From: Octopus sinensis
Lineage: Eukaryota
NCBI RefSeq assembly: GCF_006345805.1
Contig: NC_042998.1
Span: 15,500,001-15,564,000, forward strand
DNA: 64,000 bases
Direction: 5' to 3'
In this document: one piece after another, positions 3,022-61,248 of the stretch
How positions within the stretch are numbered: the stretch's first letter is position 1
How the letters are laid out: the number at the start of each line of letters is the position of its first letter
Program-made: the position numbers and the translations under genes
Notes under the pieces: model-generated
Database searches by the model: none
Seen by the model: the letters and a program-made list of their open reading frames with translations, nothing else
Told to the model about the DNA's origin: nothing

Positions 3022-3252
3022 AAGGCGGCGAGCTGGCAGAGACGTTAGCCCGCAGGACGAAGTGCTTCGCGGTATTTCGCCCGTCGCTACGTTCTGAGTT
3101 CAATTTCCGCCAAGGTCGACTTTGCCTTTCATCCTTACGGGGTCGATTAAATAAGCGCCAGTTATGCATTGGGGTCGATATAATCGACTTAATCCGTTTG
3201 TCTGTCCTTGTTTGTCCCCTCTATGTTTAGCCCCTTGTGGGTAATAAAGAAA
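3022..3252 (+). mobile_element. SINE group A, young copy with alternative 3' tail and 14-bp TSD
   Basis: ggcggcgagctggcaga head, gagttcaatttcc B-box-like motif; attttcatcataat at 2990-3003 and 3259-3272. Confidence 0.9.
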
Positions 3253-9173: not shown

Positions 9174-9246
9174 TATATATATATATATGAACATATACAT
9201 ATTTACATTTATATGGGTGTGTACATGCAAACACGGGCAAACATTG

Positions 9247-9316
<70 letters not shown>

Positions 9317-9416
9317 AATATATATATATGTATAAATATACATATACATATATATATATACATATATATATATACATATAAAGAAGTGGTTGTGTGATAA
9401 GTAGCTATATATATAT

Positions 9417-9582
9417 AGACGCGGGAGCAGCAGTGTGATTAGTAGCTTGCTTACCAACCACAAAGTGCCGGGTTCAGTCCCACTGCGTGGCACCTTTGGC
9501 AAGTGTCTTGTACTATAGCCACGGTCCGACCAAAGCATTCTGAGTGGATTCGGTAGACAGAAACCGAAAGACGACCGTCGCT

Positions 9583-9617
<35 letters not shown>

Positions 9618-9656
9618 ATGCGTATCTGTGTGTGTGTGTGTGTGTGTGTATGCGTA

Positions 9657-9691
<35 letters not shown>

Positions 9692-9878
9692 CTGTGTCTG
9701 TGTATGTTTGTCCCCCAATATCGCTTGACAACCGATGCTAGTGCGGTTAAGTCCCCGTTATATAGCGGTTCGGCAAAAAAAGCTGATAGAATAAGTACTA
9801 GGCTTATAAGTCCGGGGGTTGATTTGCTCCAACATGGCCGCAGTCCAATAACTGAAACATGTGAAAGAGTAAGAGTAA
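9417..9878 (+). mobile_element. SINE group B with internal microsatellite
   Basis: tRNA-like head (gggttcagtccc), gcacctttggcaagtgtctt, internal (TA)/(TG) tract, 3' catggccgcagtc...ctgaaaca..gaaagagtaagag. Confidence 0.85.
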
Positions 9879-15799: not shown

Positions 15800-16876
15800 T
15801 CCTAAGAAACAGCCACTTCATGTTCGACAATACGTTTCATAGATAAAAATATGTTATGAGCACTAGGGCAATCCAAATCATTGCGAACCTAACAATGGAC
15901 TATCTGGAAATGATAATATATCAGGAATCTTTATCTATCTTTAGCAACCCCCTTTCCCAATACATAAAAGAAAATTGGAAAAGATTCCTAGAAGACTGTT
16001 TAATACTCTGGAATGAAAACACAGACAAACTCCTGGAATTCAAAATACTATTGAACAACGTCAACACAAACACACACTTCACAATGGAGTACAACGAAAA
16101 GGAGCTCCCATTCTTGGATATACTAATTAAAGAAATAAACCTAAAAATAGAAAACGACATATTTTTACAAAACCACAGACGCCATACAATATCTACTATT
16201 TTATTCATGCCACCCAAGACACAAGAAAACAAATATTTCCCTTCAAACTTGCAAGGAGGATATGCACAATAGTGTCATAAAAACTACCAGAGGCTGCAAG
16301 AACTCAAAAACACCCTAATTGACAGACACTAACCAGTTCAACTCATAGAGGATGGAATCAGACTTGTAACACAAATCGACATAGAAAAGTTCAACACAGC
16401 AATACACCTTCACCGAAAATACAGCCGTACATATCCACCTACAACCCAAGAAACATCCGAAATTTAGCAATGCTACATAAGGACCCTAAATTAAGGGAAA
16501 TTTTACACACACATAAAACCATTAAAAACCACAAACAACCAAAATCACAAAAAAATATCCTCATAAATCTGATTCTACTTGTGCTTCAGAAAACCTGATT
16601 TATGTTAGAAGATTGTCAGGCTGCCACCGAAACTACATAGGATCCACGGGATTATTGCTCAGACGCAGATGCTCTCTGCATCGACAGCAGATTGCATCCC
16701 TAGACTACGGAATGATACCCTTTAGTGAATATATTAAAAAATGCGCAAAGCAACTGCTACAACAATTTGTAATCTTTCCATTTTATCAATGTGCCATTGG
16801 AACACCAACGCAAGTTAGATTAAATAAGGAAACCTTCTTCATTGAACAATATAAGCCAAGACTCAACCATTTCTAA
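15800..16876 (+). mobile_element. Penelope-like element, RT (C-terminal half) and GIY-YIG endonuclease, disrupted
   Basis: WKRFLEDCLILW, FTMEYNEKELPFLDILI, YLLFYSCHPRH, NLIYV..SGCHRNYIGSTG.LLRRR.SLHRQQI, ETFFIEQYKPRLN. Confidence 0.92.
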
Positions 16877-17332: not shown

Positions 17333-18445
17333 TCTTTTTATCTAGTTTCAGCTCACAAGCTGTGGCCATGCTGAGGCACCGCCATTTGGTGTTGTGACAT
17401 GATTTTACTTCACGAATGCTTTTTAGCAATTGCCATTTGGTGCATGAGAGAGTTCGATGTAGCTGCCCTCATCTGCACCTCCTGCCGTGAAGTTGGTTCA
17501 TCTGGGACACCTGACAAGAAGAGATCCAGTTTTATTTTAAAGACATCTGCATCTACCCCATGCAGGTCTCTTAGGTTCTTCGGGAGGATATTGAAGAGTT
17601 GTGGGCCTCGGCAGCTCAGGCTATCACAGTATCTTGTCCTACATCTTGATGGAAAATTTGGAGTCCTTGGCACTATGCAGTGGGGCCCAGTTCTGGCAGT
17701 TGTGTAACTCTCGATTCCAAAGTTTGGGACAAATCCTTCTAGGATCTTTCAGATGTATATTATGGAATATCTTTCTCGCCTACGCTCTAAGGAATAGAAT
17801 CTCAATCTCTTAAGTCTTTCCCAGTAGAGTATATGCTGCACAGAGGCTATCTTCTTCGTGTAGCTTCGTTGGATCGCCTCACGTTCTGTGATTAACTTGA
17901 CACTGGATGGTGACCAGAGCTGAGAGCAATAGTCAAAGTGGCTTAGGACAAGTGTCCTCCAGAGGACCATCATGGTTTCCTGGTCTCTTGTTCTAAAGGT
18001 TCTAAGAATCCATCCGGTAGCCGCCTAAGTTTCATTGCCAATTTAGCAACATGCACATGAAAGGTTGCATCATCACTCATGTAAATACCCAGGTCTCGTA
18101 CTGATTGTGCCTCTGGGATTGCAATCCCTCCAGGTGCAGTGTATTTATTGGGTATTGCATTAAGTTTTGCATGCTGATAGCATAAAGCTTGAAATTTTTC
18201 AGCATTGAACTGCATGCTATTCTTTTCAGCCCACTTATATATTTTGTCCAGCTCACATTGCAGGTGCTTAGTGTATTCATGGTTCTGCATTGCCTGTGAA
18301 ACTTTTGTATCATCTGCATAACTTGTGATCGTGGCTCTCTGCGTGGCTGGGGGCATGTCTGAGAGGGCCATTATGAACAGTAGTGGTCCCAAAACAGTGC
18401 CTTCTGGAACACCGCTCACTATTTGCGTGTTAATGGAAGTGGCCC
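17333..18445 (-). mobile_element. CR1/L2-clade LINE, 5'-truncated, RT C-terminal region and 3' UTR
   Basis: SGVPEGTVLGPLLF, SYADDTK, FNAEKF, VRDLG, LVLSHFDYCSQLWSP, YSLERRRERY; 3' tail ends against (TA)n. Confidence 0.95.
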
Positions 18446-19884
18446 CATGTACATACATATGTGTGCGTGTGTGTGTTGTAATATTGATATTAGCCCGCCT
18501 GGATCAAACCCTACATCAATTACTTTTATTTGTTATACAACATAACTTTCTAAAGACCACAAATGAAATTGCTTAGCTTACCAACTTTCGAAATAACACC
18601 AGTCTCAATATTTGTTGAGAATCTATTTAGAACTTCTGCATTAACGCCGATGCTGAGAACGCTGCCAATAATCAAATCCATTGTTGCATAATTATTATAT
18701 TCGTAAATTTGCTACATCGTAGCTTGAGATATTTTTAAATATCTGTATAGATTTGAATCAATAAGGAAACCATCCTGTTTAGATACGATATCTATATGCA
18801 ATAAAATATTTAATTAAAATATTAAACCTACACGAAGATAAATCGTTGAGGAGCACAATACGAGAGATGCAAAGTTCGTAAGCTATGTAGGTTTGATTTG
18901 AAATCTTATATGAATCAATTTCACATCTTTGTATTAATAACTGCAATGTTTCTTCCATGTTAACTGACATCTGAAAATTGGACGTCAAAAGAAAAGGATG
19001 GCAAATTCTCTTGAAAATGGCCAAAAGTTGACGTGGTGTTATGAAGTGTCTGCAGAAAAAGAGATTAACCCCCAAGGATACTCACACTGACAAGGTTACT
19101 ATATAAAGTGATGCCGGTCCAGCTTCCTCAGTTGTACAAAATAGGACATCCGAATTTAGGAGGGGATGGTAGAGGGTTGGAAATGATCCAAGTTCTGAAC
19201 GTTTTGCAGCTGGAAAACCGATCGTGTCCATCACAACGTGATTACGGGCAATTGACTATAAACCAAATTACCAATGCTTCTAGCATAAACCGTAAGAAGC
19301 ATAAGAAGACGCACGCACGCGGTCGCACACACACACACACACTCACACACACACACACTCACACACACACACAGGTATATATATATATATTGGGCTATAT
19401 CAGCTATACACTCGCATCGGCGGTAGAATGCTCATCTTATTATCTTAATTAAAGATATCTTTATTATCTTAATTAATACACGCATGCCATTTCTTCTAGT
19501 GAGCTCATGCCGCGAATATGCTACACCTAATATAGTTTTGAAGTACAGGATGTTTACTATAATTATCTTGCACACTATGTACCTTCAACACACAGTATTA
19601 TCTTGGCATGACGAAGGTTTCTGATTGGGGCGTGCCATGCCTTATGATACCTAACTAAAAACGCATCAGGCTGATTACATTACGGGAAAATCTCACAATA
19701 TTTCAATAAGATCAAGGTGGTTTCCTTGAACGTTTCCTCACCCAAGATGTGTGTGTAGGGCTCATCACTTTGAAACATTCCATTCACTGGAAACACGCTG
19801 CTTTACGTGCTCCAAACAAGCCTAAGTAGGTTTCATCTGCGGGTAAAGTGATATCCTCAGTTCTTTTGGACGAGAAAATTATTG

Positions 19885-20076
19885 TTGTGGTAAGTAGCTT
19901 ATTCACAAACCTCATAGTGCCGTGTACAGTCCCACTACGTGGCACCTTGGGAAAGTATCTTCTACTATAGCCTTGGGCCGACAAAAACCTTGGGAGGGGA
20001 TTTGATAGACGGAAACTGAGAGAAGCCTGTCGTATACATACATAAATACATACATACATATATATATATATGTATG

Positions 20077-20143
<67 letters not shown>

Positions 20144-20356
20144 ATATATTTGTGTTTTTGTGTTTGTCCCCCCATCGTCGCTTGACAATCGATGCTGGTG
20201 TGTTAACGTCCCCGTAACTTAGCGGTTCGGCAAAGAAGAACGATAGTATAAGTACTTGGCATTTAAATAATAAGTCCTGGAGTAGATTTGTTAGTCTAAA
20301 AGCGGTGCTCCAGCATGGCCACGGTCAAATAAATGAAATAAGTGAAAGAGTAAAAG
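19885..20356 (+). mobile_element. SINE group B
   Basis: gtggtaagtagctt...gcaccttgggaaagtatctt...internal microsatellite...ggcggtgctccagcatggcc...aaagagtaaaag. Confidence 0.85.
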
Positions 20357-23190: not shown

Positions 23191-24857
23191 ATTATTATTA
23201 ATCGTAAATATTATTATCAGTTAACAACTATATTAATAGATCTCCGCAATCATACGCACACGGGTATGCCTGCATGTCTCTAACTGCGTAATTATCTACC
23301 TGTTTGTGATGAATCATTAACTGTTTTTCATATAATACACATTCTTAGAGATTAGATAAAGGCATATATTTTGTTAATAACATGTGTATGAAACCATTCT
23401 TATATTTGAGCCATTCATTCTTTAGTCAACGAATTCTTTTTTGCTATTTCTCTCTTGGTATAACTGCTTCCATTGCTTTCCTTTACTTAACACGATATTT
23501 TGTTCTCCATTCTTAACCTTGTCTTGTTCTGTTACCTAGCTACGTATAGAATTGATTGCAACTTGCCTAACCTGATATATGTTCAAGTTAATCTCAGTAT
23601 GGTGTCGATTTAGAAATTCGAAATGTATCTAAAATTTATACTCCCGTAAAATAGCGTTTAATGGATTACCATTCATCTTGGCAGAAGCCGTTTCTGCCAT
23701 TCTAAGATATTCATTAGAAGCATAAACAACCAAACTGCCGGCGTGAAGTCTAGGGACGTTGCCCAGGGTGATCTTACTACGAAATTATGCTAAGAATAGT
23801 GTTTGGAATATATAATGTAAATCGAAATTATGACATGTTTAGATGAAAAAAAAATCTATTGTTAGTATTCGTGTCAGTAAGCAATCTAATTTTTTTTTAT
23901 GTCATGGTACAACGAGCATGGCGGTGATATGAATAATTCTAGACAAGATGTTAAATGCTACGTATTTGTAAATTTATTGCAATTTGTTTTTAAAACAATT
24001 CTCTTTATAAAATCGATATATTTGCGATAAATATTGTAGCATTTCAGCGGTAAATTCGAAAATATTTGTGCGCTATCATTTTCAGGGAAATAATTATGTG
24101 AGGGGATTCATTTATTGATGATAGGCAGGCACTGACATGAAACAGAAAAAAAAACCCCGCTATTATTTGTTTTCATCTTCATCCTTTCCAAATTTCTAGA
24201 TCTTGAAATTTGAAATCACTTTCAATGTGGATTTCTTTCGATGTAATGTACTATAATTAAAAGAAGTATGAAATATCTACTGTTCTACAATAGAAATTAC
24301 TCCAGACATTATCAAGTGCATTGAATATCCGCCACATTCAATAAACACCTTGCTATCTGTAGTGTTTTACGATAAATTAAGTGTCTGAACTGACAGAAGT
24401 TTTTAAGAAGCAAATCTCGTTGATTTAATACAATTTCATTGTATATATATCATATAATAGCTTAGTAGATAAGTCTGTCTGTAGCTTTCTATGAGCATAT
24501 AAGTACGTGTATAGCAACACACTCACGCATATATTTCTTTCATCATATTACAATATATAAATTCCCTGTTGTTCTTGAGATTCCGGTACTGACCATTGTA
24601 TCTTTAAAGTGTAGCTAACATCTTATGATGTAGTATACGAAATTTGCCAGAAATCTGCGTTACTCACCCTCCAACATATTGGAACATACACAATGCATTA
24701 GGCAATGAGAGAATTACTCAGAACTTCACAAGATGTTATTGCAAATTAAATTACATAGGATATTTATTTGAATCTAAAATATATTTATTTCAAAATAAGT
24801 AGAAATATCCAGTACAAATATCTCCTGATGAACCTCAGGTTAATATTTAGCAATTGT

Positions 24858-25078
24858 CAGGCGGTGAGCTGGCAGAATATTTAGCAAGTCGGTGGAATTG
24901 CTTAGCAGCATTTCGCCATCTTGGCGTTCTGAGTTCAAGTTCCGCCGATACTAACTTTGCATTTTATCCCCTGGCGGTCGATAAAATAAGTACCTGTCGG
25001 ATACTGGGGTGGATGTAATCAACCTTTCCCCTCTCTTGAAATTGCTGACCTTGTGCCAAAATTTGAAAGCAATATTTA
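24858..25078 (+). mobile_element. SINE group A
   Basis: aggcggtgagctggcagaa...gttctgagttcaagttccgcc...gtgccaaaatttgaaagcaata. Confidence 0.85.
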
Positions 25079-28995: not shown

Positions 28996-29284
28996 GAATT
29001 AGGGGGCGCCACCCGCTCTGGATTGAGTTGATGTCTCGTTGGCTTTAACATATTTTATGTCGTTACTCGGTTTCCGTTTCGATTCCTTGTTTTTTTCTCT
29101 CGCTCGCCCGCCGGCAGTCGCCGCCGTTCCGTTCGTTCGTTCTCTCACCATCAAACGTTCGGTTTGTTCCTTACCTGCGTCTAGCCGTCGTCGCTGCCGT
29201 GCGGCTACATGCCTTTGCTCACTCAGCAGGGACGACCTCGTCGCACGTGTCTTCCGCGCTCGCTCGCAGCTTTTTTTGACAGAT

Positions 29285-29560
29285 GCCTCACAAAATAATA
29301 TTGTATACAAATGCACGGTATCAGCTGAGAATTCCAGTTACCTATACATCGGCTCATGCAGCACCACCTTCAAGGTTAGAGTTAGTAGCCACTATTCTAG
29401 ATTTTAATCCCGAGCATGGGCTTTCAGCACTTCCCCATCACAGCTAATCCATGGCCATCCATGGCCAGAAACTAAACTCAATTCTATATAATTTACAACT
29501 GTCTATAATTACTCATAACCGTTTAACGGTTATTACGACAAAAGCGATCTATGCAGGTTA
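29285..29560 (+). mobile_element. Second Penelope-like GIY-YIG fragment (different family)
   Basis: NNIVYKCTVSAENSSYLYIGSCSTTFKVRVSSHYSRF in ORF 29039-29407. Confidence 0.8.
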
Positions 29561-29766: not shown

Positions 29767-30199
29767 TTACTCTCTTACTCTTTTACTCTTTTACTTGTTT
29801 CAGTCACTTGACTGCGGCCATGCTGGAGCACCGCCTTTAGTCGAGCAAATCGACCCCGGGACTCATTCTTTGTAAGCCCAGTACTTATTCAATCGGTCTC
29901 TTTTGCCGAACCGCTAAGTGGCGGGGACGTAAACACACCAGCATCGGTTGTCAAGCAATCCTTGGGGGACAAACACACACACACACACAAACTCACACAC
30001 ATACACATATATATATATATGTATATACATATATACGACAGGCTTCTTTCAGTTTCCGTCTACCAAATCCACTCACATGGCATTGGTCGGCCCGGGGCTA
30101 TAGCAGAAGACACTTGCCCAAGATGCCACGCAGTGGGACTGAACCCGGAACCATGTGGTTGGTTAGCAAGCTACTTACCACACAGCCACTCCTGCGCCT
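29767..30199 (-). mobile_element. SINE group B, young full-length copy (an older partial copy lies at ~29640-29762)
   Basis: Near-consensus aggcgcaggagtggctgtgtggtaag head to gactgaaacaagtaaaagag tail. Confidence 0.92.
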
Positions 30200-30869
30200 A
30201 TTTATTCACAATATTTTCAATGTAAAGAGAGTACGGTTAAAGTAAGGTTTTCAGATTTAGTTACCATGTCTTGTAAATGAGTAGCGAGGGAATATGTTTA
30301 AAAATACAGAAATACACGATTAACAAAAAATAGTCATGATATATCAGTTTTAGGCAAGAATTAACTAAAAACATGTTTGTGAAAGCTTTTCAATTCCTAT
30401 TCTGTGTTCTTCATCGCCGAAAAGAAAAATGAAAAATAACTTGAGATGAAATACATCACTTATGTAACGCGGCGAAGGCAGATAAATCTTGTAGCGAGTG
30501 TATAAAACATGTGTGTATATATACGCGTGTGTGAAAGTGTGTGTGCCTGGGGCATGTATGCTTTATAAATACTTCTTATCTAAACGACGTTCATCTCTAT
30601 ATATATGTATAGTAGTATGGAAATGGATCAATAGCATTCATAGTATTCTACAACATGTCCATTTGTTAACATGTATGTTTCTTTGATTATGTTTGATTAG
30701 TACGTAGTGGCAAGCCATACCGAAACTATCATGTCTTCTGGAACAATGGCGGGACGATAGCATGCGATCCGCCCCTCACAGTGATTTTTCAGTGTGCACT
30801 GGCATGAACCAGAGTTATTTCTGCGTTCCGGCGCTCTGATTGATTTTCATCACGTAGGCCAGTTAATCT

Positions 30870-36310: not shown

Positions 36311-36552
36311 GCGTTGTGTATTTACTCGAAGATCCAAAATATGAAATATTGATCTTTCTACGTGTATCCAAAATAAATACTACTGCAACACTTTTAAATC
36401 TTGCACGGATTGATATTAATATATTTTTGTATTGAAGCTTACTTGCCGCATTCTTTAGTGAGTGATATCTTAAAATAATAGTATTATTTTCTCCATACCA
36501 TTTGTAGTGACCATGAAAACATTTAGACAAGGTAAATTAAACAAGGTAAATT

Positions 36553-36980
36553 AGGCGCAGGAGTGGCTGTGTGGTAAGTAGCTTGCTAACCAACCACATG
36601 GTTCCAGGTTCAGTCCCACTGCGTGGCATCTTGGGTAAGTGTCTTCTGCTATAGCCCCGGGCCGACCAATGCCTTGTGAGTGGATTTGGTAGACGGAAAC
36701 TGAACGAAACCTGTCGTATATATGTGCATATCTATATGTATATGTATGTATGTGTATGTGTTTGAGTACCTGTGTTTGTACCTCTAGCATTGCTTGACCA
36801 CCGATGCTGGTGTGTTTACGTCCTCGTCACTTAGCGGTTCGGCAAAAGAGACCGATAGAATAAGTACTGGGCTTACAAAGAATAAGTCCCGGGGTCGATT
36901 TGCTCGACTAAAGGCGGTGCTCTAGCATGGCCGCAGTCAAATGACTGAAACAAGTAAAAGAGTAAAAGAGTATAAAAGAG
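36553..36980 (+). mobile_element. SINE group B, young full-length copy
   Basis: aggcgcaggagtggctgtgtggtaag...cagtcaaatgactgaaacaagtaaaagagtaaaagag. Confidence 0.92.
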
Positions 36981-53235: not shown

Positions 53236-54913
53236 CATACAGAAGAATGAAGCGCAAACATTTCTATACTAAAGTGTAAAATGTGTGAAGCACTGAAATT
53301 GTTATACGTACTTAATATCCACCACACAAATACAAGTTCTCAATTAACCCCAAACGTGCTCATATGCATACATCAAATAATTCCTACGGCTACCACCCCT
53401 CCAACACGTCTTAACTGAAACAACAGAACCGTATCACTTGGTTAGTGACCAATAAGCATTCTCCAAATGAAAAATCGCACATATCTGTATGCGTGAATAA
53501 GCAGATTTGCATAAAGATACGAAATAGCACCGGCATGATTACGGAAATAACGTTAATGCCTAATATGCACATTTTCAGATTCTAAATTTTATATATGGCG
53601 TAACGTTTTTTGCATAATAATATGAAATGCATAAAGCCACTTTGTAATATCCGTTAATATATAGATTTAAATGCTATCCTCTGGTGAACTTAGCATTTAG
53701 AGAATCCCAATGACTCGGCGGTATTATTACTTTGTTAAACCTATAGTTCATGCCAATGTGACTTATAAGCTATTTACCAGACAATAAATGGTGGCATGTG
53801 GAATATGTCGAATGAATCATTGTTGTGTAAATAGGAAAGATATCTCAGTACAGGTTCCGAATATATTTAAAACGCAATATTACTTTATAAGTTCGGAAAA
53901 GAAACAAATGAAATCATAACGTACCCATGGATATTCGAGTGAAAGTCTTTTGTATTTTCTCATTTCTCATTACGTGTGTATAAGTAGGCGTGCTTCTATT
54001 TATATATCGATGTGTGGTACAGGGGAGGAATTATGGTCGATCGAAAGAGAAGTATTAATTACTAAAATTATGGTAGGTGTTTAACTGAGGTGGGATACTC
54101 AGTCATATGTTAACTAATACGTTTGAAACTCTAGATAAAAATCTTAGAAATAAGATAAGGAGCTGTCGTATTTTAGTTATCAATGTTTCGTTTCCATTCT
54201 AGTATCTGCTTCAGAACGGAGGTATAGTGTGTTTTCTTAAAAATTTAATTGTTGTGATATAACACTGTAGCACAACATTAAACCAGCATTATGTCTGTTG
54301 TGCTAACGATTCTGCCAGCTCTCCGCCTTATATATAGAAATAACGATAGCAAACAGGAAACAGTTATGATATTCAAAGATTCATAGGATACACACACGTT
54401 TTAGCAACATGTTCAAATAATTAGATTAGCGTTTGTGAAACATCATGTACTCTTGCACCTCAGCTCATCACTGTCCCGAAATAAATATGCACTTATAGTG
54501 CAGGATGCATCAGCGTCCCGCTGTAGTGATGTGTATAATTGCATAATGTTTCTACAACGTTTATGTAATTATCTGGGTATTTTTAAGAAACGCGTGTATC
54601 ACCTATAAATCATAGAATACCATGCATCATTTTCTGCCTATTAATATCATATCTATTATTTGCATGTCATTCTGCACACTAGCCTATACCGAGGATGATA
54701 CTCCACGTCGCAGTATACTGGATACTAGACTAGAATGTGGAATCAACGGTGGAGCCGGATCATTGGCTACGAATTCTGCTTTACAGTCTTTTTTAGACAC
54801 ATAAATATATACACACACGTGCGCTCATACACATACACATATATATTAGTCGTAACATATAGAAGAAGATGAATTTACATATAGGGTTTATAGTACATTA
54901 TAGCAAATGTCAG

Positions 54914-55914: not shown

Positions 55915-56072
<158 letters not shown>

Positions 56073-56113
56073 TACATATATACATACACACACTCACACA
56101 CACACACACACAC

Positions 56114-56169
<56 letters not shown>

Positions 56170-56398
56170 ATAGAAATATTAAAATTACTAAGTCTCTCTA
56201 AAAGAGAACAACGGCAGCGTTCCCGGAAAATAATAGTTATCGCCATACTAATATGGCATTCTTATAAAAATAAGAATAAAGCTGTCCGCTTATTAACTCC
56301 ATGAGGCCATCGCCTTAAGTTAGCTATTTGATACACAAACTGTATCCATATAACCTTCGAACAAGGGAGGTCAGTCGCTCCACACTACTTGACAGGCA

Positions 56399-56440
56399 GC
56401 TACAGACGCGTTTTGGGGTATTGCCCCTTTTCAATGCAGC
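56399..56440 (-). ncRNA. Type I hammerhead ribozyme motif, U3-A8 variant, G12A substitution
   Basis: gctgca-TTGAAAA-gggg-caata-cccc-AAAA-cgcg-TC-tgtagc. Confidence 0.75.
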
Positions 56441-56760
56441 GTAGCCAGACCAGTAGGTGTCGCTTCTGACAATCGCTGTTCGAAGGTTTTATTTACCTAG
56501 CTTCGGTGGAATACATCCACTTGTTTTCAATAATAGAAATATTAAAATTACTAAGTCTCTCTAAAAGAGAACAACGGCAGCGTTCCCGGAAAATAATAGT
56601 TATCGCCATACTAATATGGCATTTTTATAAAAATAAGAATAAAGCTGTCCGCTTATTAGCTCCATGAGGCCATCGCCTTAAGTTAGCTATTTGATACACA
56701 AACTGTATCCATATAACCTTCGGACAGGGAGGTCAGTCGCTCCACACTACTTGACAGGCA

Positions 56761-56802
56761 GCTACAGACGCGTTTTGGGGTATTGCCCCTTTTCAATGCA
56801 GC
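56761..56802 (-). ncRNA. Type I hammerhead ribozyme motif, U3-A8 variant, G12A substitution
   Basis: Identical to 56399-56440. Confidence 0.75.
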
Positions 56803-57123
56803 GTAGCCAGACCAGTAGGTGTCGCTTCTGACAATCGCTGTTCGAAGGTTTTATTTACCTAGCTTCGGTGGAATACATCCACTTGTTTTCAATAATAGAA
56901 ATATTAAAATTACTAAGTCTCTCTAAAAGAGAACAACGGCAGCGTTCCCGGAAAATAATAGTTATCGCCATACTAATATGGCATTTTTATAAAAATAAGA
57001 ATAAAGCTGTCCGCTTATTAGCTCCATGAGGCCATCGCCTTAAGTTAGCTATTTGATACACAAACTGTATCCATATAACCTTCGGACAAGGGAGGTCAGT
57101 CGCTCCACACTACTTGACCGGCA

Positions 57124-57165
57124 GCTACAGACGTGTTTCGGGGTATTGCCCCTTTTCAATGCAGC
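57124..57165 (-). ncRNA. Type I hammerhead ribozyme motif, U3-A8 variant, intact GAAA
   Basis: gctgca-TTGAAAA-gggg-caata-cccc-GAAA-cacg-TC-tgtagc. Confidence 0.82.
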
Positions 57166-57454
57166 GTAGCCAGACCAGTAGGTGTCGCTTCTGACAATCG
57201 CTGTTCGAAGGTTTTATTTACCTAGCTTCGGTGGAATACATCCACTTGTTTTCAATAATATAAATATTAAAATTACTAAGTCTCTCGAAGGTTATATGGA
57301 TACAGTTTGTGTATCAAATAGCTAACTTAAGGCGATGGCCTCATGGAGCTAATAAGCGGACAGCTTTATTCTTATTTTTATAAGAATGTCATATTAGTAT
57401 GGCGATAACTATTATTTTCCGGGAACGCTGCCGTTGTTCTCTTTTAGAGAACAT

Positions 57455-57540
57455 CCCGAAAGGATGAAAGACACATTCGACACCGGTGGCATTTGAACTC
57501 AGAGCGTAAAGTGCTAACAATTTTGCCAGCTCACCGCCTT
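57455..57540 (-). mobile_element. SINE group A 5' fragment abutting the array
   Basis: cccgaaaggatgaaag...tttgaactcagagcg...ttgccagctcaccgcctt. Confidence 0.75.
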
Positions 57541-61015: not shown

Positions 61016-61248
61016 ATCTCCTCTGCTTTTCTGTAAAGAGCTTGCATACTTGTACTTATGCTTTTCCCCATGGTTATTGCTTTTATGATCTCATAGCTTC
61101 AAGAAGGGAGGTTATGAAGCTATGTGTCTGTAGTATCTCTTCTGCTTTTCTGGAAACAGTTTGCATACTTGTATTTATACTTTTCCCTATGGTAATTGCT
61201 TTTATGATCTCACAGCTTTAAGAAGGTTATGAAGCTATGTGTCCATAG
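61016..61248. repeat. Tandem duplication, 2 x ~117 bp, with a hairpin in each unit
   Basis: atctc.tctgcttttctg...gaagctatgtgtc..tag twice; catagcttca/tgaagctatg stem in unit 1. Confidence 0.88.

What the first reader, a model, noticed from the sequence alone, without database searches (positions are those of the whole stretch)
56167..57450. Tandem hammerhead-ribozyme array (candidate cephalopod retrozyme) with the rare U3-A8 core variant
Seen in sequence: three ~363-bp units, ~99% identical, plus ~30 bp of terminal redundancy. Each carries on the minus strand gctgca-UUGAAAA-gggg(caata)cccc-GAAA/AAAA-cgcg/cacg-UC-tgtagc. This is complete type-I hammerhead topology: 6-bp stem I, 4-bp stem II, a one-base-pair stem III with palindromic ACGCGU, and a GUC cleavage triplet. 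The core reads U3...A8 instead of C3...G8. Established knowledge: positions 3 and 8 form a tertiary Watson-Crick pair, so the double change is compensatory rather than random decay. Minimal hammerheads with palindromic stem III act as dimers in Penelope-like elements, newt satellite 2 and metazoan non-LTR retrozymes. Inference: a minus-strand multimeric transcript would self-cleave at 57130/57129, 56767/56766 and 56405/56404, giving 363- and 362-nt monomers that could circularise and be copied by an autonomous PLE RT. PLE remnants occur elsewhere in this window. I found no protein-coding capacity in the unit. A core search requiring CUGANGA would miss this family.
Basis: partly seen in the sequence, partly recalled or inferred. 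Interest (0 to 1): 0.93.

Follow-up and report, generated by a model that had tools for sequence, protein, structure and literature searches.

The report
Decayed hammerhead retrozyme array in octopus
A 1.3-kb block of a 363-bp repeat in an octopus-like genome carries three copies of a self-cleaving "hammerhead" RNA motif, the kind small parasitic retroelements (retrozymes) use to make circular RNAs. It is a new example of a known kind, and each copy at this locus has a probably disabling mutation.

Summary
A 363-bp unit is repeated 3.1 times (56167-57289, minus-strand sense), and each unit junction carries a complete type-I hammerhead motif with U3/A8 in place of C3/G8. A covariance model built only from four published, experimentally tested animal retrozyme hammerheads (coral, mussel, two axolotl) ranks these three sites first in the 64-kb window. 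They score 33.3, 27.3 and 27.3 bits (E about 3e-7 to 1.5e-5); the next hit scores 12 bits. Rfam finds nothing.

First, 57286-57450 is an inverted copy of unit positions 46-210, not terminal redundancy. With the roughly 28-nt extra "tail" and the (TA)n flank, this is the insertion signature described for Penelope-like elements, or for twin priming. Second, no copy is intact: two have A at the catalytic G12, and the third has a broken ACGCGU palindrome. The "GAAA+CGCG consensus" is therefore a chimera. Third, the U3-A8 covariation was already reported in nature in 2011 and 2014.

Best reading: a relic insertion of a non-LTR retrozyme in an octopus genome, copied from multimeric or circular RNA by target-primed reverse transcription. 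No other family copy could be retrieved, so covariation, family consensus and activity remain untested. It is a new member of a known kind.

The parts
56167..57289 (-). Direct tandem array of the 363-bp unit, numbered from the predicted cleavage site: unit positions ~207-363, 1-363, 1-362, 1-238. This is 3 units plus about 30 nt.
   Evidence: TRF; BLAST of the unit against the window; junction walk; variant table, (10 variable positions).
57286..57450 (+). Inverted, 5'-truncated partial unit: unit positions 46-210 read on the plus strand. Position 210 abuts the flank. Position 46 is joined to position ~207/208 of the direct array, with a 3-4 nt overlap.
   Evidence: 98.8% identity, 165 nt. The layout matches the 'inverted 5'-truncated copy adjacent to the upstream copy' described for PLE insertions (PMC8557442). 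By established knowledge it also matches a twin-priming 5' inversion.
57124..57165 (-). Hammerhead copy 1: GCUGCA UUGAAAA GGGG CAAUA CCCC GAAA CACG UC|UGUAGC. G12 is intact but the helix III palindrome is broken (ACACGU). Predicted cleavage lies between 57130 and 57129.
   Evidence: CM R1: 33.3 bits, E 2.6e-7, full-length match, all 12 pairs standard.
56761..56802 (-). Hammerhead copy 2: same motif with AAAA (A at position 12) and the palindromic ACGCGU. The nominal cleavage site is 56767/56766.
   Evidence: CM R1: 27.3 bits, E 1.5e-5.
56399..56440 (-). Hammerhead copy 3: identical to copy 2. The nominal cleavage site is 56405/56404.
   Evidence: CM R1: 27.3 bits, E 1.5e-5.
57080..57215 (-). 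Long imperfect hairpin across a unit junction. The hammerhead sits at its tip. Helix I continues through a 3-nt/1-nt internal loop (UAC/U) and a distal GGC/GCC helix into a duplex of about 43 bp.
   Evidence: strand folding (-53.6 kcal/mol, z = -4.83; helices I and II appear in both the MFE and centroid structures). The axolotl retrozyme hammerheads show the same 6-bp proximal helix, 3/1 internal loop and distal helix.
56167..56194 (-). About 28 nt at the 3' end of the array (unit positions 211-238). This stretch lies beyond the point (position 210) where the inverted copy ends, and is a candidate PLE-type 'tail'.
   Evidence: Coordinates. A PLE 'tail' is a 30-40 bp extension, often present at only one end, and equals the distance between two RT start sites (PMC8557442; PMC11167929). 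This is an inference.
55920..56169 (.). (TA)n/(AC)n/(AT)n microsatellite directly abutting the 3' end of the array. It is the likely AT-rich target.
   Evidence: TRF; sequence. (TA)n and AT-rich target preference of PLE endonucleases.
57451..57530 (-). Truncated tRNA-derived SINE-like fragment forming the 5' flank, in the same orientation as the hammerhead strand. Its 3' part is missing and is not found on the other side of the array.
   Evidence: a full copy of the same repeat lies at 3023-3250.

Best explanation
This is a relic genomic insertion of a non-autonomous, non-LTR 'retrozyme' in an octopus-type genome. A retrozyme is a small tandem retroelement whose RNA carries a type-I hammerhead ribozyme.

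In the active family, the inferred life cycle follows the published retrozyme model. An array is transcribed in the minus-strand sense into oligomeric RNA. Neighbouring hammerheads pair through the palindromic ACGCGU to form a double hammerhead with a 6-bp helix III. [quoted passage not shown] A host tRNA ligase circularises them into a highly self-paired RNA. A reverse transcriptase from an autonomous element, most likely a Penelope-like element, then copies circular or multimeric RNA into tandem cDNA at an AT-rich target.

At this locus the product is 3.5 contiguous unit-lengths. The 5'-most 165 nt were copied from the opposite target strand, which is why they are inverted. The 3' end carries a ~28-nt extension next to (TA)n.

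The core uses a U3-A8 pair instead of C3-G8, a documented compensatory variant. The locus itself is probably no longer able to process: two cores have A12, and the third has a mismatched dimerisation palindrome.

Shown here: the sequence anatomy, the statistical match to tested retrozyme ribozymes, the predicted folds and the insertion architecture. Inferred: transcription, cleavage, circularisation, the identity of the reverse transcriptase and the ancestral state of the core.
For: 1. CM R1 was built only from coral, mussel and axolotl retrozyme hammerheads taken from Suppl. Table 2 of PMC7229834. It puts the three motifs first in the window at 33.3/27.3/27.3 bits, against 12 bits for the next hit. 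The best score in 41 kb of other cephalopod-type DNA is 11.6 bits.
2. Descriptor hits occur only here, against a chance expectation of 0-0.03 per window.
3. Features not used in the model also agree with the axolotl, coral and mussel ribozymes: a 6-bp proximal helix I, a 3-nt/1-nt internal loop plus distal helix, a 5-nt C-A-rich loop 2, a G10.1-C11.1 pair, and palindromic ACGCGU (Ax330 has ACAUGU, mussel ACGCGCGU).
4. The unit is 363 bp, 41% GC, tandem, has no ORF above 53 aa and has no protein homologue in any frame. This matches the published definition: 150-450 bp, GC below 45-50%, no LTR/PBS/PPT.
5. The monomer RNA is strongly self-paired: -116.8 kcal/mol, z = -5.36, 62% paired as a circle.
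6. RNAcofold of two junction segments carrying ACGCGU gives the double-hammerhead topology as the MFE. Helix I forms in trans and helix III is a 6-bp intermolecular duplex. The dimer is -45.3 kcal/mol against 2 x -18.5 for monomers.
7. A ribozyme motif is present on one strand only, and no other Rfam ribozyme is found.
8. The insertion architecture fits PLE insertions and dual-strand priming: an inverted 5'-truncated segment whose inner end (position 46) joins the direct array at position ~207/208, while its outer end is position 210; a ~28-nt extra 3' stretch; an adjoining (TA)n; and ends that do not coincide with the ribozyme cleavage site.
9. U3/A8 is shared by all three copies and is a known natural, active covariation.
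10. Decayed RT and GIY-YIG-like remnants and an Octopus sinensis-related RT fragment lie in the same window.
Against: - No second locus of the family could be retrieved. There is therefore no covariation test, no family consensus, no copy number and no empty-site comparison.
- Rfam hammerhead models give no hit even at E <= 10.
- No copy in the window is a fully consensus hammerhead. The local majority has A12, which by established knowledge is strongly inactivating.
- The fold z-score is equally strong on the plus strand (-5.94) and G-U asymmetry is weak, so RNA-level selection on the minus strand is not demonstrated.
- No clear target-site duplication was found.
- The PLE remnants in the window share no sequence with the unit and carry no hammerhead.
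- The inverted segment could equally be a later DNA inversion.
- E-values from R1 are rough, because calibration was shortened and the model has only four seed sequences.
Confidence: 0.8

Rival explanations
1. An ordinary tandem duplication or satellite in which a hammerhead-like string arose by chance. There is no ribozyme ancestry.
For: Rfam finds no hammerhead. Two of the three copies lack G12, and the core departs from CUGANGA. Only one locus is available. A relaxed descriptor would give hundreds of chance hits across a multi-gigabase genome, extrapolating from 0.02 per 64 kb.
Against: The independent CM gives 27-33 bits against a background of 12 bits or less. The two core changes are exactly the compensatory 3/8 pair. 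Features outside the descriptor also match tested retrozyme ribozymes: the palindromic helix III, the 3/1 internal loop, the distal helix, loop 2 and the G10.1-C11.1 pair. The motif sits at the tip of a hairpin with z = -4.8. Unit size and GC content fit retrozymes.
Confidence: 0.03
2. The family is the same, but the architecture arose at the DNA level. A shorter insertion expanded by unequal crossing-over, and the 46-210 segment was inverted later by a local DNA rearrangement. In that case the layout says nothing about reverse transcription of a multimer or about PLEs.
For: Units 1 and 2 are more alike than the edge units. The two outermost pieces share G at position 144 against A in the central units, which is the pattern expected from post-insertion homogenisation. 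One inversion breakpoint lies in the short palindrome UCUCU-UUU-AGAGA at positions 198-210. No target-site duplication is seen.
Against: A DNA inversion would need one breakpoint to fall exactly at the array/flank boundary, because no flank DNA lies inside the inverted block. The layout is the one produced by twin priming: an inverted upstream segment with its outer end at the position where the direct part begins, and a 3-4 nt overlap. It is also the layout drawn for PLE insertions. The 28-nt offset between the two outer ends matches the PLE 'tail' length.
Confidence: 0.2
3. A retrozyme-type element mobilised by a LINE (classical twin priming) rather than by a Penelope-like element.
For: A LINE-type RT fragment is in the window (RVT_1, E 3e-10). 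By established knowledge, twin-priming inversions are best documented for L1. The retrozyme authors leave 'LINEs or PLEs' open.
Against: There is no poly(A) or LINE-like 3' tail. There is no microhomology between the flank and the RNA at the inverted end, whereas priming without homology is reported for a PLE. A (TA)n target, a ~30-nt tail and head-to-head copies are described as PLE signatures. Retrozymes co-occur with PLEs and are related to their pLTRs.
Confidence: 0.2
4. The locus as it stands is still an active self-cleaving array that releases 363/362-nt RNAs.
For: Copy 1 keeps every core residue, with U3-A8. In a double hammerhead, its core could cut the partner's GUC. The A15.1-U16.1 pair, GUC, and helices I and II are intact in all copies.
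Against: Monomer release needs two cuts, but two of the three cores carry A at the general-base position G12. The copy 1 x copy 2 helix III is only -3.5 kcal/mol, against -8.9 for the intact palindrome, and it is not formed in the cofold MFE. Dimer-dependent animal hammerheads are already weak in vitro.
Confidence: 0.1

Closest known systems
Axolotl non-LTR retrozymes Ax330 / Ax353 (Cervera & de la Pena 2020, PMC7229834) and newt satellite 2
   Same: Tandem non-coding repeats of 330-353 bp. The type-I hammerhead has a 6-bp proximal helix I, a 3-nt/1-nt internal loop plus distal helix, a 4-bp helix II with a 5-6-nt C/A-rich loop, GAAA, and a 6-8-nt palindromic helix III (ACAUGU / ACACGUGU) that forces action as a dimer. 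The monomer is highly self-paired.
   Different: The core here is U3...A8 rather than C3...G8. There is no sequence similarity outside the motif. The host is a cephalopod. Expression and cleavage are untested. The copies at this locus are damaged at G12 or in the palindrome.
Mytilus galloprovincialis retrozyme Mg353 (same paper)
   Same: A mollusc host, a ~353-bp tandem unit, and the helix III palindrome ACGCGCGU (here ACGCGU), followed by GUC|UG. Autonomous PLEs co-exist in the genome.
   Different: The mussel ribozyme has the canonical CUGAUGA core and cleaves efficiently as a monomer. About 5,000 copies are known there, whereas the copy number here is unknown.
U3-A8 minimal hammerheads of Schistosoma mansoni Cercyon Penelope-like elements (Cervera & de la Pena 2014, PMC4209133), and the natural U3/A8 covariation of Perreault et al. 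2011 (PMC3088659)
   Same: The same compensatory change of the tertiary 3-8 pair in a retroelement-associated animal hammerhead, and the same dimer logic.
   Different: Those are 'min-HHRs' in pLTRs flanking an RT-EN ORF. [quoted passage not shown] The motif here has the canonical retrozyme architecture (4-bp helix II, no bulge, palindromic loop 3) and lies in a non-coding tandem unit.
Penelope-like element insertion structure (Craig et al. 2021, PMC8557442; Frangieh et al. 2024, PMC11167929)
   Same: Partial tandems, an inverted 5'-truncated copy head-to-head with the direct copy, a 30-40-bp 'tail' at one end that equals the distance between two internal RT start sites, AT-rich/(TA)n targets, and priming without homology.
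   Different: No RT/EN ORF lies in or next to the array. The PLE remnants in the window are unrelated in sequence and lack hammerheads. Here the tail is 28 nt and is inferred from a single insertion.
Schistosoma Sm-alpha and cave-cricket pDo500 satellite hammerheads
   Same: Transcribed tandem or SINE-like repeats of a few hundred bp carrying type-I hammerheads.
   Different: Those have canonical cores and documented cleavage. Any resemblance of loop 2 and the UAC bulge to Sm-alpha is recalled from memory only and was not tested here.

Membership tests
Hammerhead ribozyme, type I | Three helices around the core, in type-I order: helix I open, helices II and III capped. | tested here: met
   The descriptor scan and CM R1 give full-length matches with all 12 modelled pairs standard in all three copies. 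Helices I and II appear in the MFE and centroid folds.
Hammerhead ribozyme, type I | Conserved core: C3 U4 G5 A6 N7 G8 A9 / G12 A13 A14 / A15.1-U16.1 / H17. | tested here: inconclusive
   U4, G5, A6, A9, A13, A14, A15.1, U16.1 and C17 are present in all copies. C3/G8 is replaced by U3/A8, a documented active covariation. G12 is present in copy 1 only and is A in copies 2 and 3. Under the strict criterion of Perreault et al. (any core mutation disqualifies a hit), copies 2 and 3 fail.
Hammerhead ribozyme, type I | A match to the curated Rfam hammerhead covariance models. | tested here: not met
   No hit at gathering threshold, and none at E <= 10 on 1.5 kb or on 96 nt.
Hammerhead ribozyme, type I | Site-specific self-cleavage 3' of H17. 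| not testable with these tools
   This needs in vitro transcription of monomer and dimer constructs.
Metazoan non-LTR retrozyme (Cervera & de la Pena 2020) | A type-I hammerhead inside short tandem repeats of ~150-450 bp, from dimers to multimers. | tested here: met
   The period is 363 bp with 3.1 direct copies, and there is one hammerhead per junction.
Metazoan non-LTR retrozyme (Cervera & de la Pena 2020) | Low GC content (below 45-50%), no LTR/PBS/PPT, and no coding capacity. | tested here: met
   GC is 41%. The longest ORF is 53 aa, and a six-frame query has no homologue among 5.8 billion proteins.
Metazoan non-LTR retrozyme (Cervera & de la Pena 2020) | A highly self-paired monomer RNA. 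| tested here: met
   -116.8 kcal/mol against -87.8 +/- 5.4 for shuffles, z = -5.36. As a circle it is 62% paired. The plus strand folds about as well.
Metazoan non-LTR retrozyme (Cervera & de la Pena 2020) | A hammerhead in every repeat (the 'active retrozyme' criterion of Li et al. 2026), and many dispersed copies in the genome. | tested here: inconclusive
   The motif is present at every junction, but with A12 in two of them. Copy number is unknown: no other copy was found in the window, in 20 kb of O. sinensis DNA, or through the public collections reachable here.
Metazoan non-LTR retrozyme (Cervera & de la Pena 2020) | [quoted passage not shown] | not testable with these tools
   No transcriptome data are reachable.
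Metazoan non-LTR retrozyme (Cervera & de la Pena 2020) | Co-existence with autonomous Penelope-like elements in the same genome. | tested here: inconclusive
   There is a decayed RT-like ORF at 15856-16272, 71% identical to an O. sinensis protein that has a weak RVT_1 match, and there are GIY-YIG-like peptides near 16.7 and 29.3 kb with Pfam E 0.03 at best. The literature lists PLE/Naiad families in Octopus spp.. No intact element was seen.
Penelope-like element pLTR / min-HHR | The hammerhead lies in pseudo-LTRs flanking an RT + GIY-YIG ORF. | tested here: not met
   There is no RT/EN ORF in or next to the array. The unit has no similarity to the PLE remnants in the window.
Penelope-like element pLTR / min-HHR | [quoted passage not shown] | tested here: not met
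   Helix II is 4 bp with no bulge, and a 4-nt palindromic loop 3 is present.
PLE-type insertion signature | An inverted 5'-truncated copy head-to-head with the direct copy, a 30-40 bp tail at one end, and an AT-rich or microsatellite target. | tested here: met
   The inverted 46-210 segment, 28 extra nt at the 3' end and the adjoining (TA)n are all present. The signature is as described. This is a single insertion, so coincidence or a DNA inversion is not excluded.

The most novel reading that the evidence does not exclude
Octopus genomes harbour a live retrozyme family whose canonical, loop-loop-type hammerhead runs on a U3-A8 core. This insertion would then be a molecular fossil of how retrozymes integrate. 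A single multimeric or rolling-circle RNA would have been copied from both target strands by a Penelope-like enzyme, starting at two fixed internal sites ~28 nt apart (unit positions ~210 and ~238). That would give the first insertion-level evidence tying retrozyme mobilisation to the PLE mechanism. In addition, the 165-bp inverted arm would make any read-through transcript fold into long dsRNA, a natural substrate for the very active cephalopod ADAR or small-RNA pathways.
Probability: 0.25. Interest if true: 0.55.

Novelty: new member of a known kind. Interest (0 to 1): 0.36.

Why it matters
Retrozymes are the main source of ribozyme-derived circular RNAs in animals, and how they are mobilised is still argued from co-occurrence with Penelope-like elements. 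I found no cephalopod retrozyme in the searchable literature.

The locus illustrates two points. First, standard screens (Rfam models, CUGANGA descriptors) are blind to families that use the U3-A8 core, so surveys of hammerheads and retrozymes undercount them. Second, the ends of the insertion carry mechanistic information: an inverted 5' piece, a ~28-nt tail, a (TA)n target, and ends away from the cleavage site. This could be tested genome-wide to decide which enzyme copies retrozyme RNA.

The locus is probably dead, so its value is as a pointer to the family rather than as a functional element.

Tried and rejected
1. Rfam at gathering threshold on the whole window, and at E <= 10 on 1.5 kb and on 96 nt, gave no hammerhead or other ribozyme. 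The only hits were microsatellite-driven miRNA look-alikes.
2. I looked for other family members in several ways.
- A 20-mer spanning the core and helix II was scanned against viral contigs (0 hits), prokaryotic genomes (0 hits) and JGI metagenomes (1 hit, a bacterial coding sequence with no GAAA after it, so a chance match).
- Exact-protein look-ups of unit ORFs and flanking ORFs found nothing.
- Homology searches with the 53-aa ORF and with a six-frame concatenation of the unit found nothing.
- A literature string search returned only unrelated primers.
3. I fetched 20 kb around an O. sinensis PLE-like gene and 20 kb around a related ENA gene. Neither contained a hammerhead above 11.6 bits.
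4. A CpG-decay argument to polarise G12/A12 and CGCG/CACG was rejected. CpG o/e is 0.93-1.04, and the third clustered difference (position 11, G/T) is a transversion.
5. An ADAR-editing signature among unit differences was rejected, because the directions of change are mixed.
6. Strand asymmetry of folding energy and G-U pairs is too weak to show which strand is the functional RNA.
7. A snap-back (hairpin-primed) origin of the inverted piece was rejected, because the junction is not palindromic.
8. For a target-site duplication, only a 4-nt 'ATGT' could be proposed, which is not significant.
9. A MAFFT alignment of the window motifs with the published ribozymes misplaced the 3' strand, so it was not used for pair counting.
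10. Relaxed min-HHR scans for PLE-type hammerheads elsewhere in the window found none.
Full report
**What is there**

Tandem Repeats Finder reports one long-period array in the window: 56167-57286, period 363, 3.1 copies, 98% matches. Read 5'->3' on the minus strand, this gives:
- 57450-57286: a reverse-complement copy of unit positions 46-210 (165 nt, 98.8% identity).
- 57289-57130: unit positions ~207-363.
- 57129-56767: a full unit of 363 nt.
- 56766-56405: a full unit of 362 nt.
- 56404-56167: unit positions 1-238. This piece runs straight into an (AT)n/(AC)n/(TA)n microsatellite (55920-56169).

There is no other copy in the window. The five pieces differ at only 10 positions.

**The motif**

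On the minus strand each junction reads GGC-UAC-GCUGCA-UUGAAAA-GGGG-CAAUA-CCCC-[G/A]AAA-C[A/G]CG-UC|UGUAGC-U-GCC. C17 falls at 57130, 56767 and 56405, exactly as reported.

A hammerhead descriptor (helix I >= 5 bp, helix II >= 4 bp, GAAA, UH) finds nothing in the window with the CUGANGA core. With UUGANAA it finds only these sites: one with strict G12, and three if position 12 may be A. First-order Markov simulations of the window give 0-0.03 such hits per 64 kb on both strands. Rfam gives no hammerhead hit at gathering threshold or at E <= 10.

**An independent test**

The supplement of Cervera & de la Pena 2020 (PMC7229834) prints four genomic retrozyme clones that the authors transcribed and assayed: coral Amil224, mussel Mg353, and axolotl Ax353 and Ax330. 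I cut out their hammerheads and aligned them (A1). I then built a covariance model with helices I and II and the two closing pairs of helix III (R1), and searched the whole window on both strands with filters off.

The three motifs are the top three hits: 33.3 bits (E about 2.6e-7) for copy 1, and 27.3 bits (E about 1.5e-5) for copies 2 and 3. All are full-length and all 12 modelled pairs are standard. The next hit scores 12 bits (E 0.45). In 41 kb of other DNA (an Octopus sinensis chromosome segment and an ENA contig) the best score is 11.6 bits. The E-values are rough because calibration was shortened, but the gap is large.

Features the model does not encode also agree with the published ribozymes:
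- A 6-bp proximal helix I followed by a 3-nt/1-nt internal loop and a distal helix. Here this is UAC/U; Ax353 has UUC/U and Ax330 has UGC/U.
- A 4-bp helix II closed by G10.1-C11.1, with a 5-6-nt C/A-rich loop.
- A palindromic helix III. Here this is ACGCGU; Ax330 has ACAUGU, Ax353 ACACGUGU and mussel ACGCGCGU.

I conclude that the motif is a genuine type-I hammerhead of the animal retrozyme type and not a chance string.

**The unit as an RNA**

The 363-nt monomer folds to -116.8 kcal/mol, against -87.8 +/- 5.4 for shuffles (z = -5.36). As a circle it is 62% paired. Across a unit junction the hammerhead sits at the tip of a ~43-bp imperfect hairpin (z = -4.83), with helices I and II present in both the MFE and centroid structures.

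The plus strand folds about as well (z = -5.94) and G-U asymmetry is small. Folding therefore does not tell which strand matters; only the ribozyme motif does, and it is on the minus strand alone.

The unit is 41% GC. Its longest ORF is 53 aa. Neither that ORF nor a six-frame concatenation of the unit has any homologue among 5.8 billion proteins. Size, GC content, tandem organisation, lack of coding and self-pairing match the published description of non-LTR retrozymes: 150-450 bp, GC below 45-50%, no LTR/PBS/PPT, and highly self-paired circRNAs of 170-400 nt.

**The dimer mechanism, and why this locus is probably dead**

As a monomer, helix III can only be the A15.1-U16.1 pair closing CGCG. 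The published view is that such palindromic helix III sequences make animal type-I hammerheads act as dimers.

RNAcofold of two 66-nt junction segments carrying ACGCGU gives the double hammerhead as the MFE. Helix I forms in trans, helix II forms in each strand, and helix III is a 6-bp intermolecular duplex. The dimer is -45.3 kcal/mol against 2 x -18.5 for the monomers, and the isolated duplex is -8.9 kcal/mol.

But the two copies with the intact palindrome (copies 2 and 3) have A at position 12. G12 is the proposed general base of the reaction. By established knowledge, and under the strict criteria of Perreault et al., such a core is treated as mutant.

The only copy with G12 (copy 1) reads ACACGU. 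This drops the heteroduplex with a neighbour to -3.5 kcal/mol, and the helix disappears from the cofold MFE. Releasing a monomer needs two cuts, so a transcript of this locus should process poorly, if at all.

The ancestral state cannot be resolved here, for three reasons:
- CpG is not depleted (o/e 0.93 in the window, 1.04 in the unit), so CpG decay cannot polarise the changes.
- The third clustered difference (position 11, G/T) is a transversion.
- The central units look homogenised relative to the edge pieces: position 144 is G in both outermost pieces and A in both central ones. 'Two against one' is therefore really one lineage against one.

An intact ancestor is the functionally sensible guess. 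The copy-1 state at position 11 also preserves a U-G pair in distal helix I that is a U-U mismatch in copies 2 and 3. Still, this remains an inference.

**U3-A8**

All three copies share U3 and A8, so the progenitor had them. The change is compensatory for the tertiary 3-8 pair, but it is not new:
- Perreault et al. 2011 reported natural covariation to U3/A8 and cite earlier proof of activity (PMC3088659).
- Cervera & de la Pena 2014 found about 1,300 U3-A8 minimal hammerheads in Schistosoma mansoni, first noticed in the Cercyon Penelope-like element (PMC4209133).
- Compensatory rescue at 3/8 has also been shown for a PLE hammerhead (C3G/G8C; PMC11167929).

What is somewhat unusual here is U3-A8 in a canonical retrozyme-type hammerhead rather than a PLE min-HHR. 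The motif fails the min-HHR criteria: it has a 4-bp helix II, no extra nucleotide after A9, and a loop 3.

**How the array got there**

The ends of the insertion do not coincide with the ribozyme cleavage site. They lie at unit positions ~210 (outer end of the inverted piece) and 238 (end of the direct array). The template was therefore not a processed linear monomer.

The inverted piece covers positions 46-210. Its position-46 end is fused to position ~207/208 of the direct array, so 3-4 nt are shared, and its position-210 end faces the flank. This is the geometry produced when one RNA is copied from both target strands. The upstream part of the template ends up inverted, and its outer end lies at the position where the direct part begins. 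By established knowledge this is twin priming in LINE-1.

It is also the 'inverted 5'-truncated copy adjacent to the upstream copy' drawn as typical for Penelope-like elements, which in addition show a 30-40-bp 'tail' at one end and a bias for (TA)n targets (PMC8557442). The purified Anolis PLE protein cleaves and extends both strands. It prefers AT-rich DNA and starts reverse transcription at two adjacent internal sites without homology to the target, and the tail is the stretch between those sites (PMC11167929).

Here the two outer ends are 28 nt apart in unit coordinates, the direct end abuts (TA)n, and there is no microhomology at the inverted end. Read this way, about 1,280 nt (3.5 unit lengths, position 46 of the first unit to position 238 of the last) were copied from one multimeric or rolling-circle template.

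This is a single insertion, and I found no convincing target-site duplication. A later DNA inversion remains possible, although it would need a breakpoint exactly at the array/flank boundary. A LINE enzyme cannot be excluded either.

**Context**

The window is an AT-rich, microsatellite-laden eukaryotic sequence. A decayed RT-like ORF (15856-16272) is 71% identical to Octopus sinensis LOC115211902. Dispersed repeats in the window are 88-89% identical to an O. sinensis chromosome segment. The cephalopod assignment is therefore reasonable.

That ORF is followed in other frames by motifs I recognise from memory as PLE-like (SCHPRHKK; NLIYV...C..YIGSTG), and another GIY-YIG-like peptide lies near 29.3 kb. 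Tool support is weak, however: RVT_1 E 1e-4 on the octopus homologue, and GIY-YIG E 0.03. These remnants share no sequence with the unit and carry no hammerhead. A LINE-type RT fragment is also present.

The 5' flank of the array is a truncated tRNA-derived SINE-like repeat whose 3' half is missing.

**What could not be done**

No second member of the family could be reached, through DNA pattern scans, exact-protein look-ups, homology searches or literature strings. This leaves several things untested: covariation in helices I and II, the family consensus at positions 3, 8 and 12 and in the palindrome, copy number, empty sites, expression, circularisation and cleavage. I found no paper in the searchable library describing cephalopod retrozymes or octopus hammerheads.

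**Verdict**

The interpretation as a retrozyme-type hammerhead array is supported. The claims of novelty for U3-A8 and of self-cleavage at this locus are not.

The most useful additions are:
- Every copy carries a probably disabling change.
- The overlooked inverted segment, together with the 28-nt tail and the (TA)n flank, is the known PLE or twin-priming insertion signature.

I rate this a new member of a known kind, of moderate interest.

Noticed in passing
window 57286-57450 versus 56920-57084, 56558-56721 and 56195-56359: The inverted 165-bp piece and the three direct copies of unit positions 46-210 form near-perfect inverted repeats about 200-1100 bp apart. Any read-through transcript could fold into ~165 bp of dsRNA, a potential ADAR or small-RNA substrate in a cephalopod.
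   Followed up: partly
window 3023-3250 (+); fragments at 57451-57530 (-), 54300-54329 and 24851-24886: A tRNA-derived SINE-like repeat, present full-length at 3023-3250. The copy abutting the array is cut after '...catcctttcggg', lies in the same orientation as the hammerhead strand, and its 3' half is not on the other side of the array. This suggests a target deletion or insertion into an already truncated copy.
   Followed up: partly
window 15856-16272 (+), continuing in other frames to ~16900: A decayed retroelement ORF, 71% identical to Octopus sinensis LOC115211902 (which has a weak RVT_1 match). Downstream lie 'SCHPRHKK' and a GIY-YIG-like 'NLIYVRRLSGCHRNYIGSTG'. This is probably a dead Penelope-like element with RT followed by EN. 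No hammerhead is nearby.
   Followed up: partly
window ~29270-29400 (+): The peptide NNIVYKCTVSAENSSYLYIGSCSTTFKVRVSSHYSRF gives a weak Pfam GIY-YIG match (E 0.03). It may be a remnant of another PLE or Naiad-type element.
   Followed up: partly
window 17970-18458 (-): A LINE-type reverse transcriptase fragment (Pfam RVT_1, E 3e-10; motif SYADDT).
   Followed up: no
window 29784-30205 (-) and 36552-36964 (+); L002 14013-14435 and 16213-16622: A dispersed repeat of ~420 bp shared with the Octopus sinensis chromosome CM016859.1 at 82-89% identity. ORFs at 9209-9718 and 19784-20188 share a similar '...PKVPRSGT.PGT...' translation next to microsatellites, suggesting another abundant short element.
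   Followed up: no
window 57110-57140 (unit positions 354, 359 and next-unit position 11): Three of the ten differences among array copies cluster within 21 nt around hammerhead copy 1, while the rest of the units differ by about 0.5%. This could reflect donor-array heterogeneity, gene conversion or homogenisation of the central units. It remains unexplained.
   Followed up: partly
window 61016-61243: A second long-period tandem repeat (119 bp x 1.9, 87% matches) of unknown nature. It contains no hammerhead hit.
   Followed up: no
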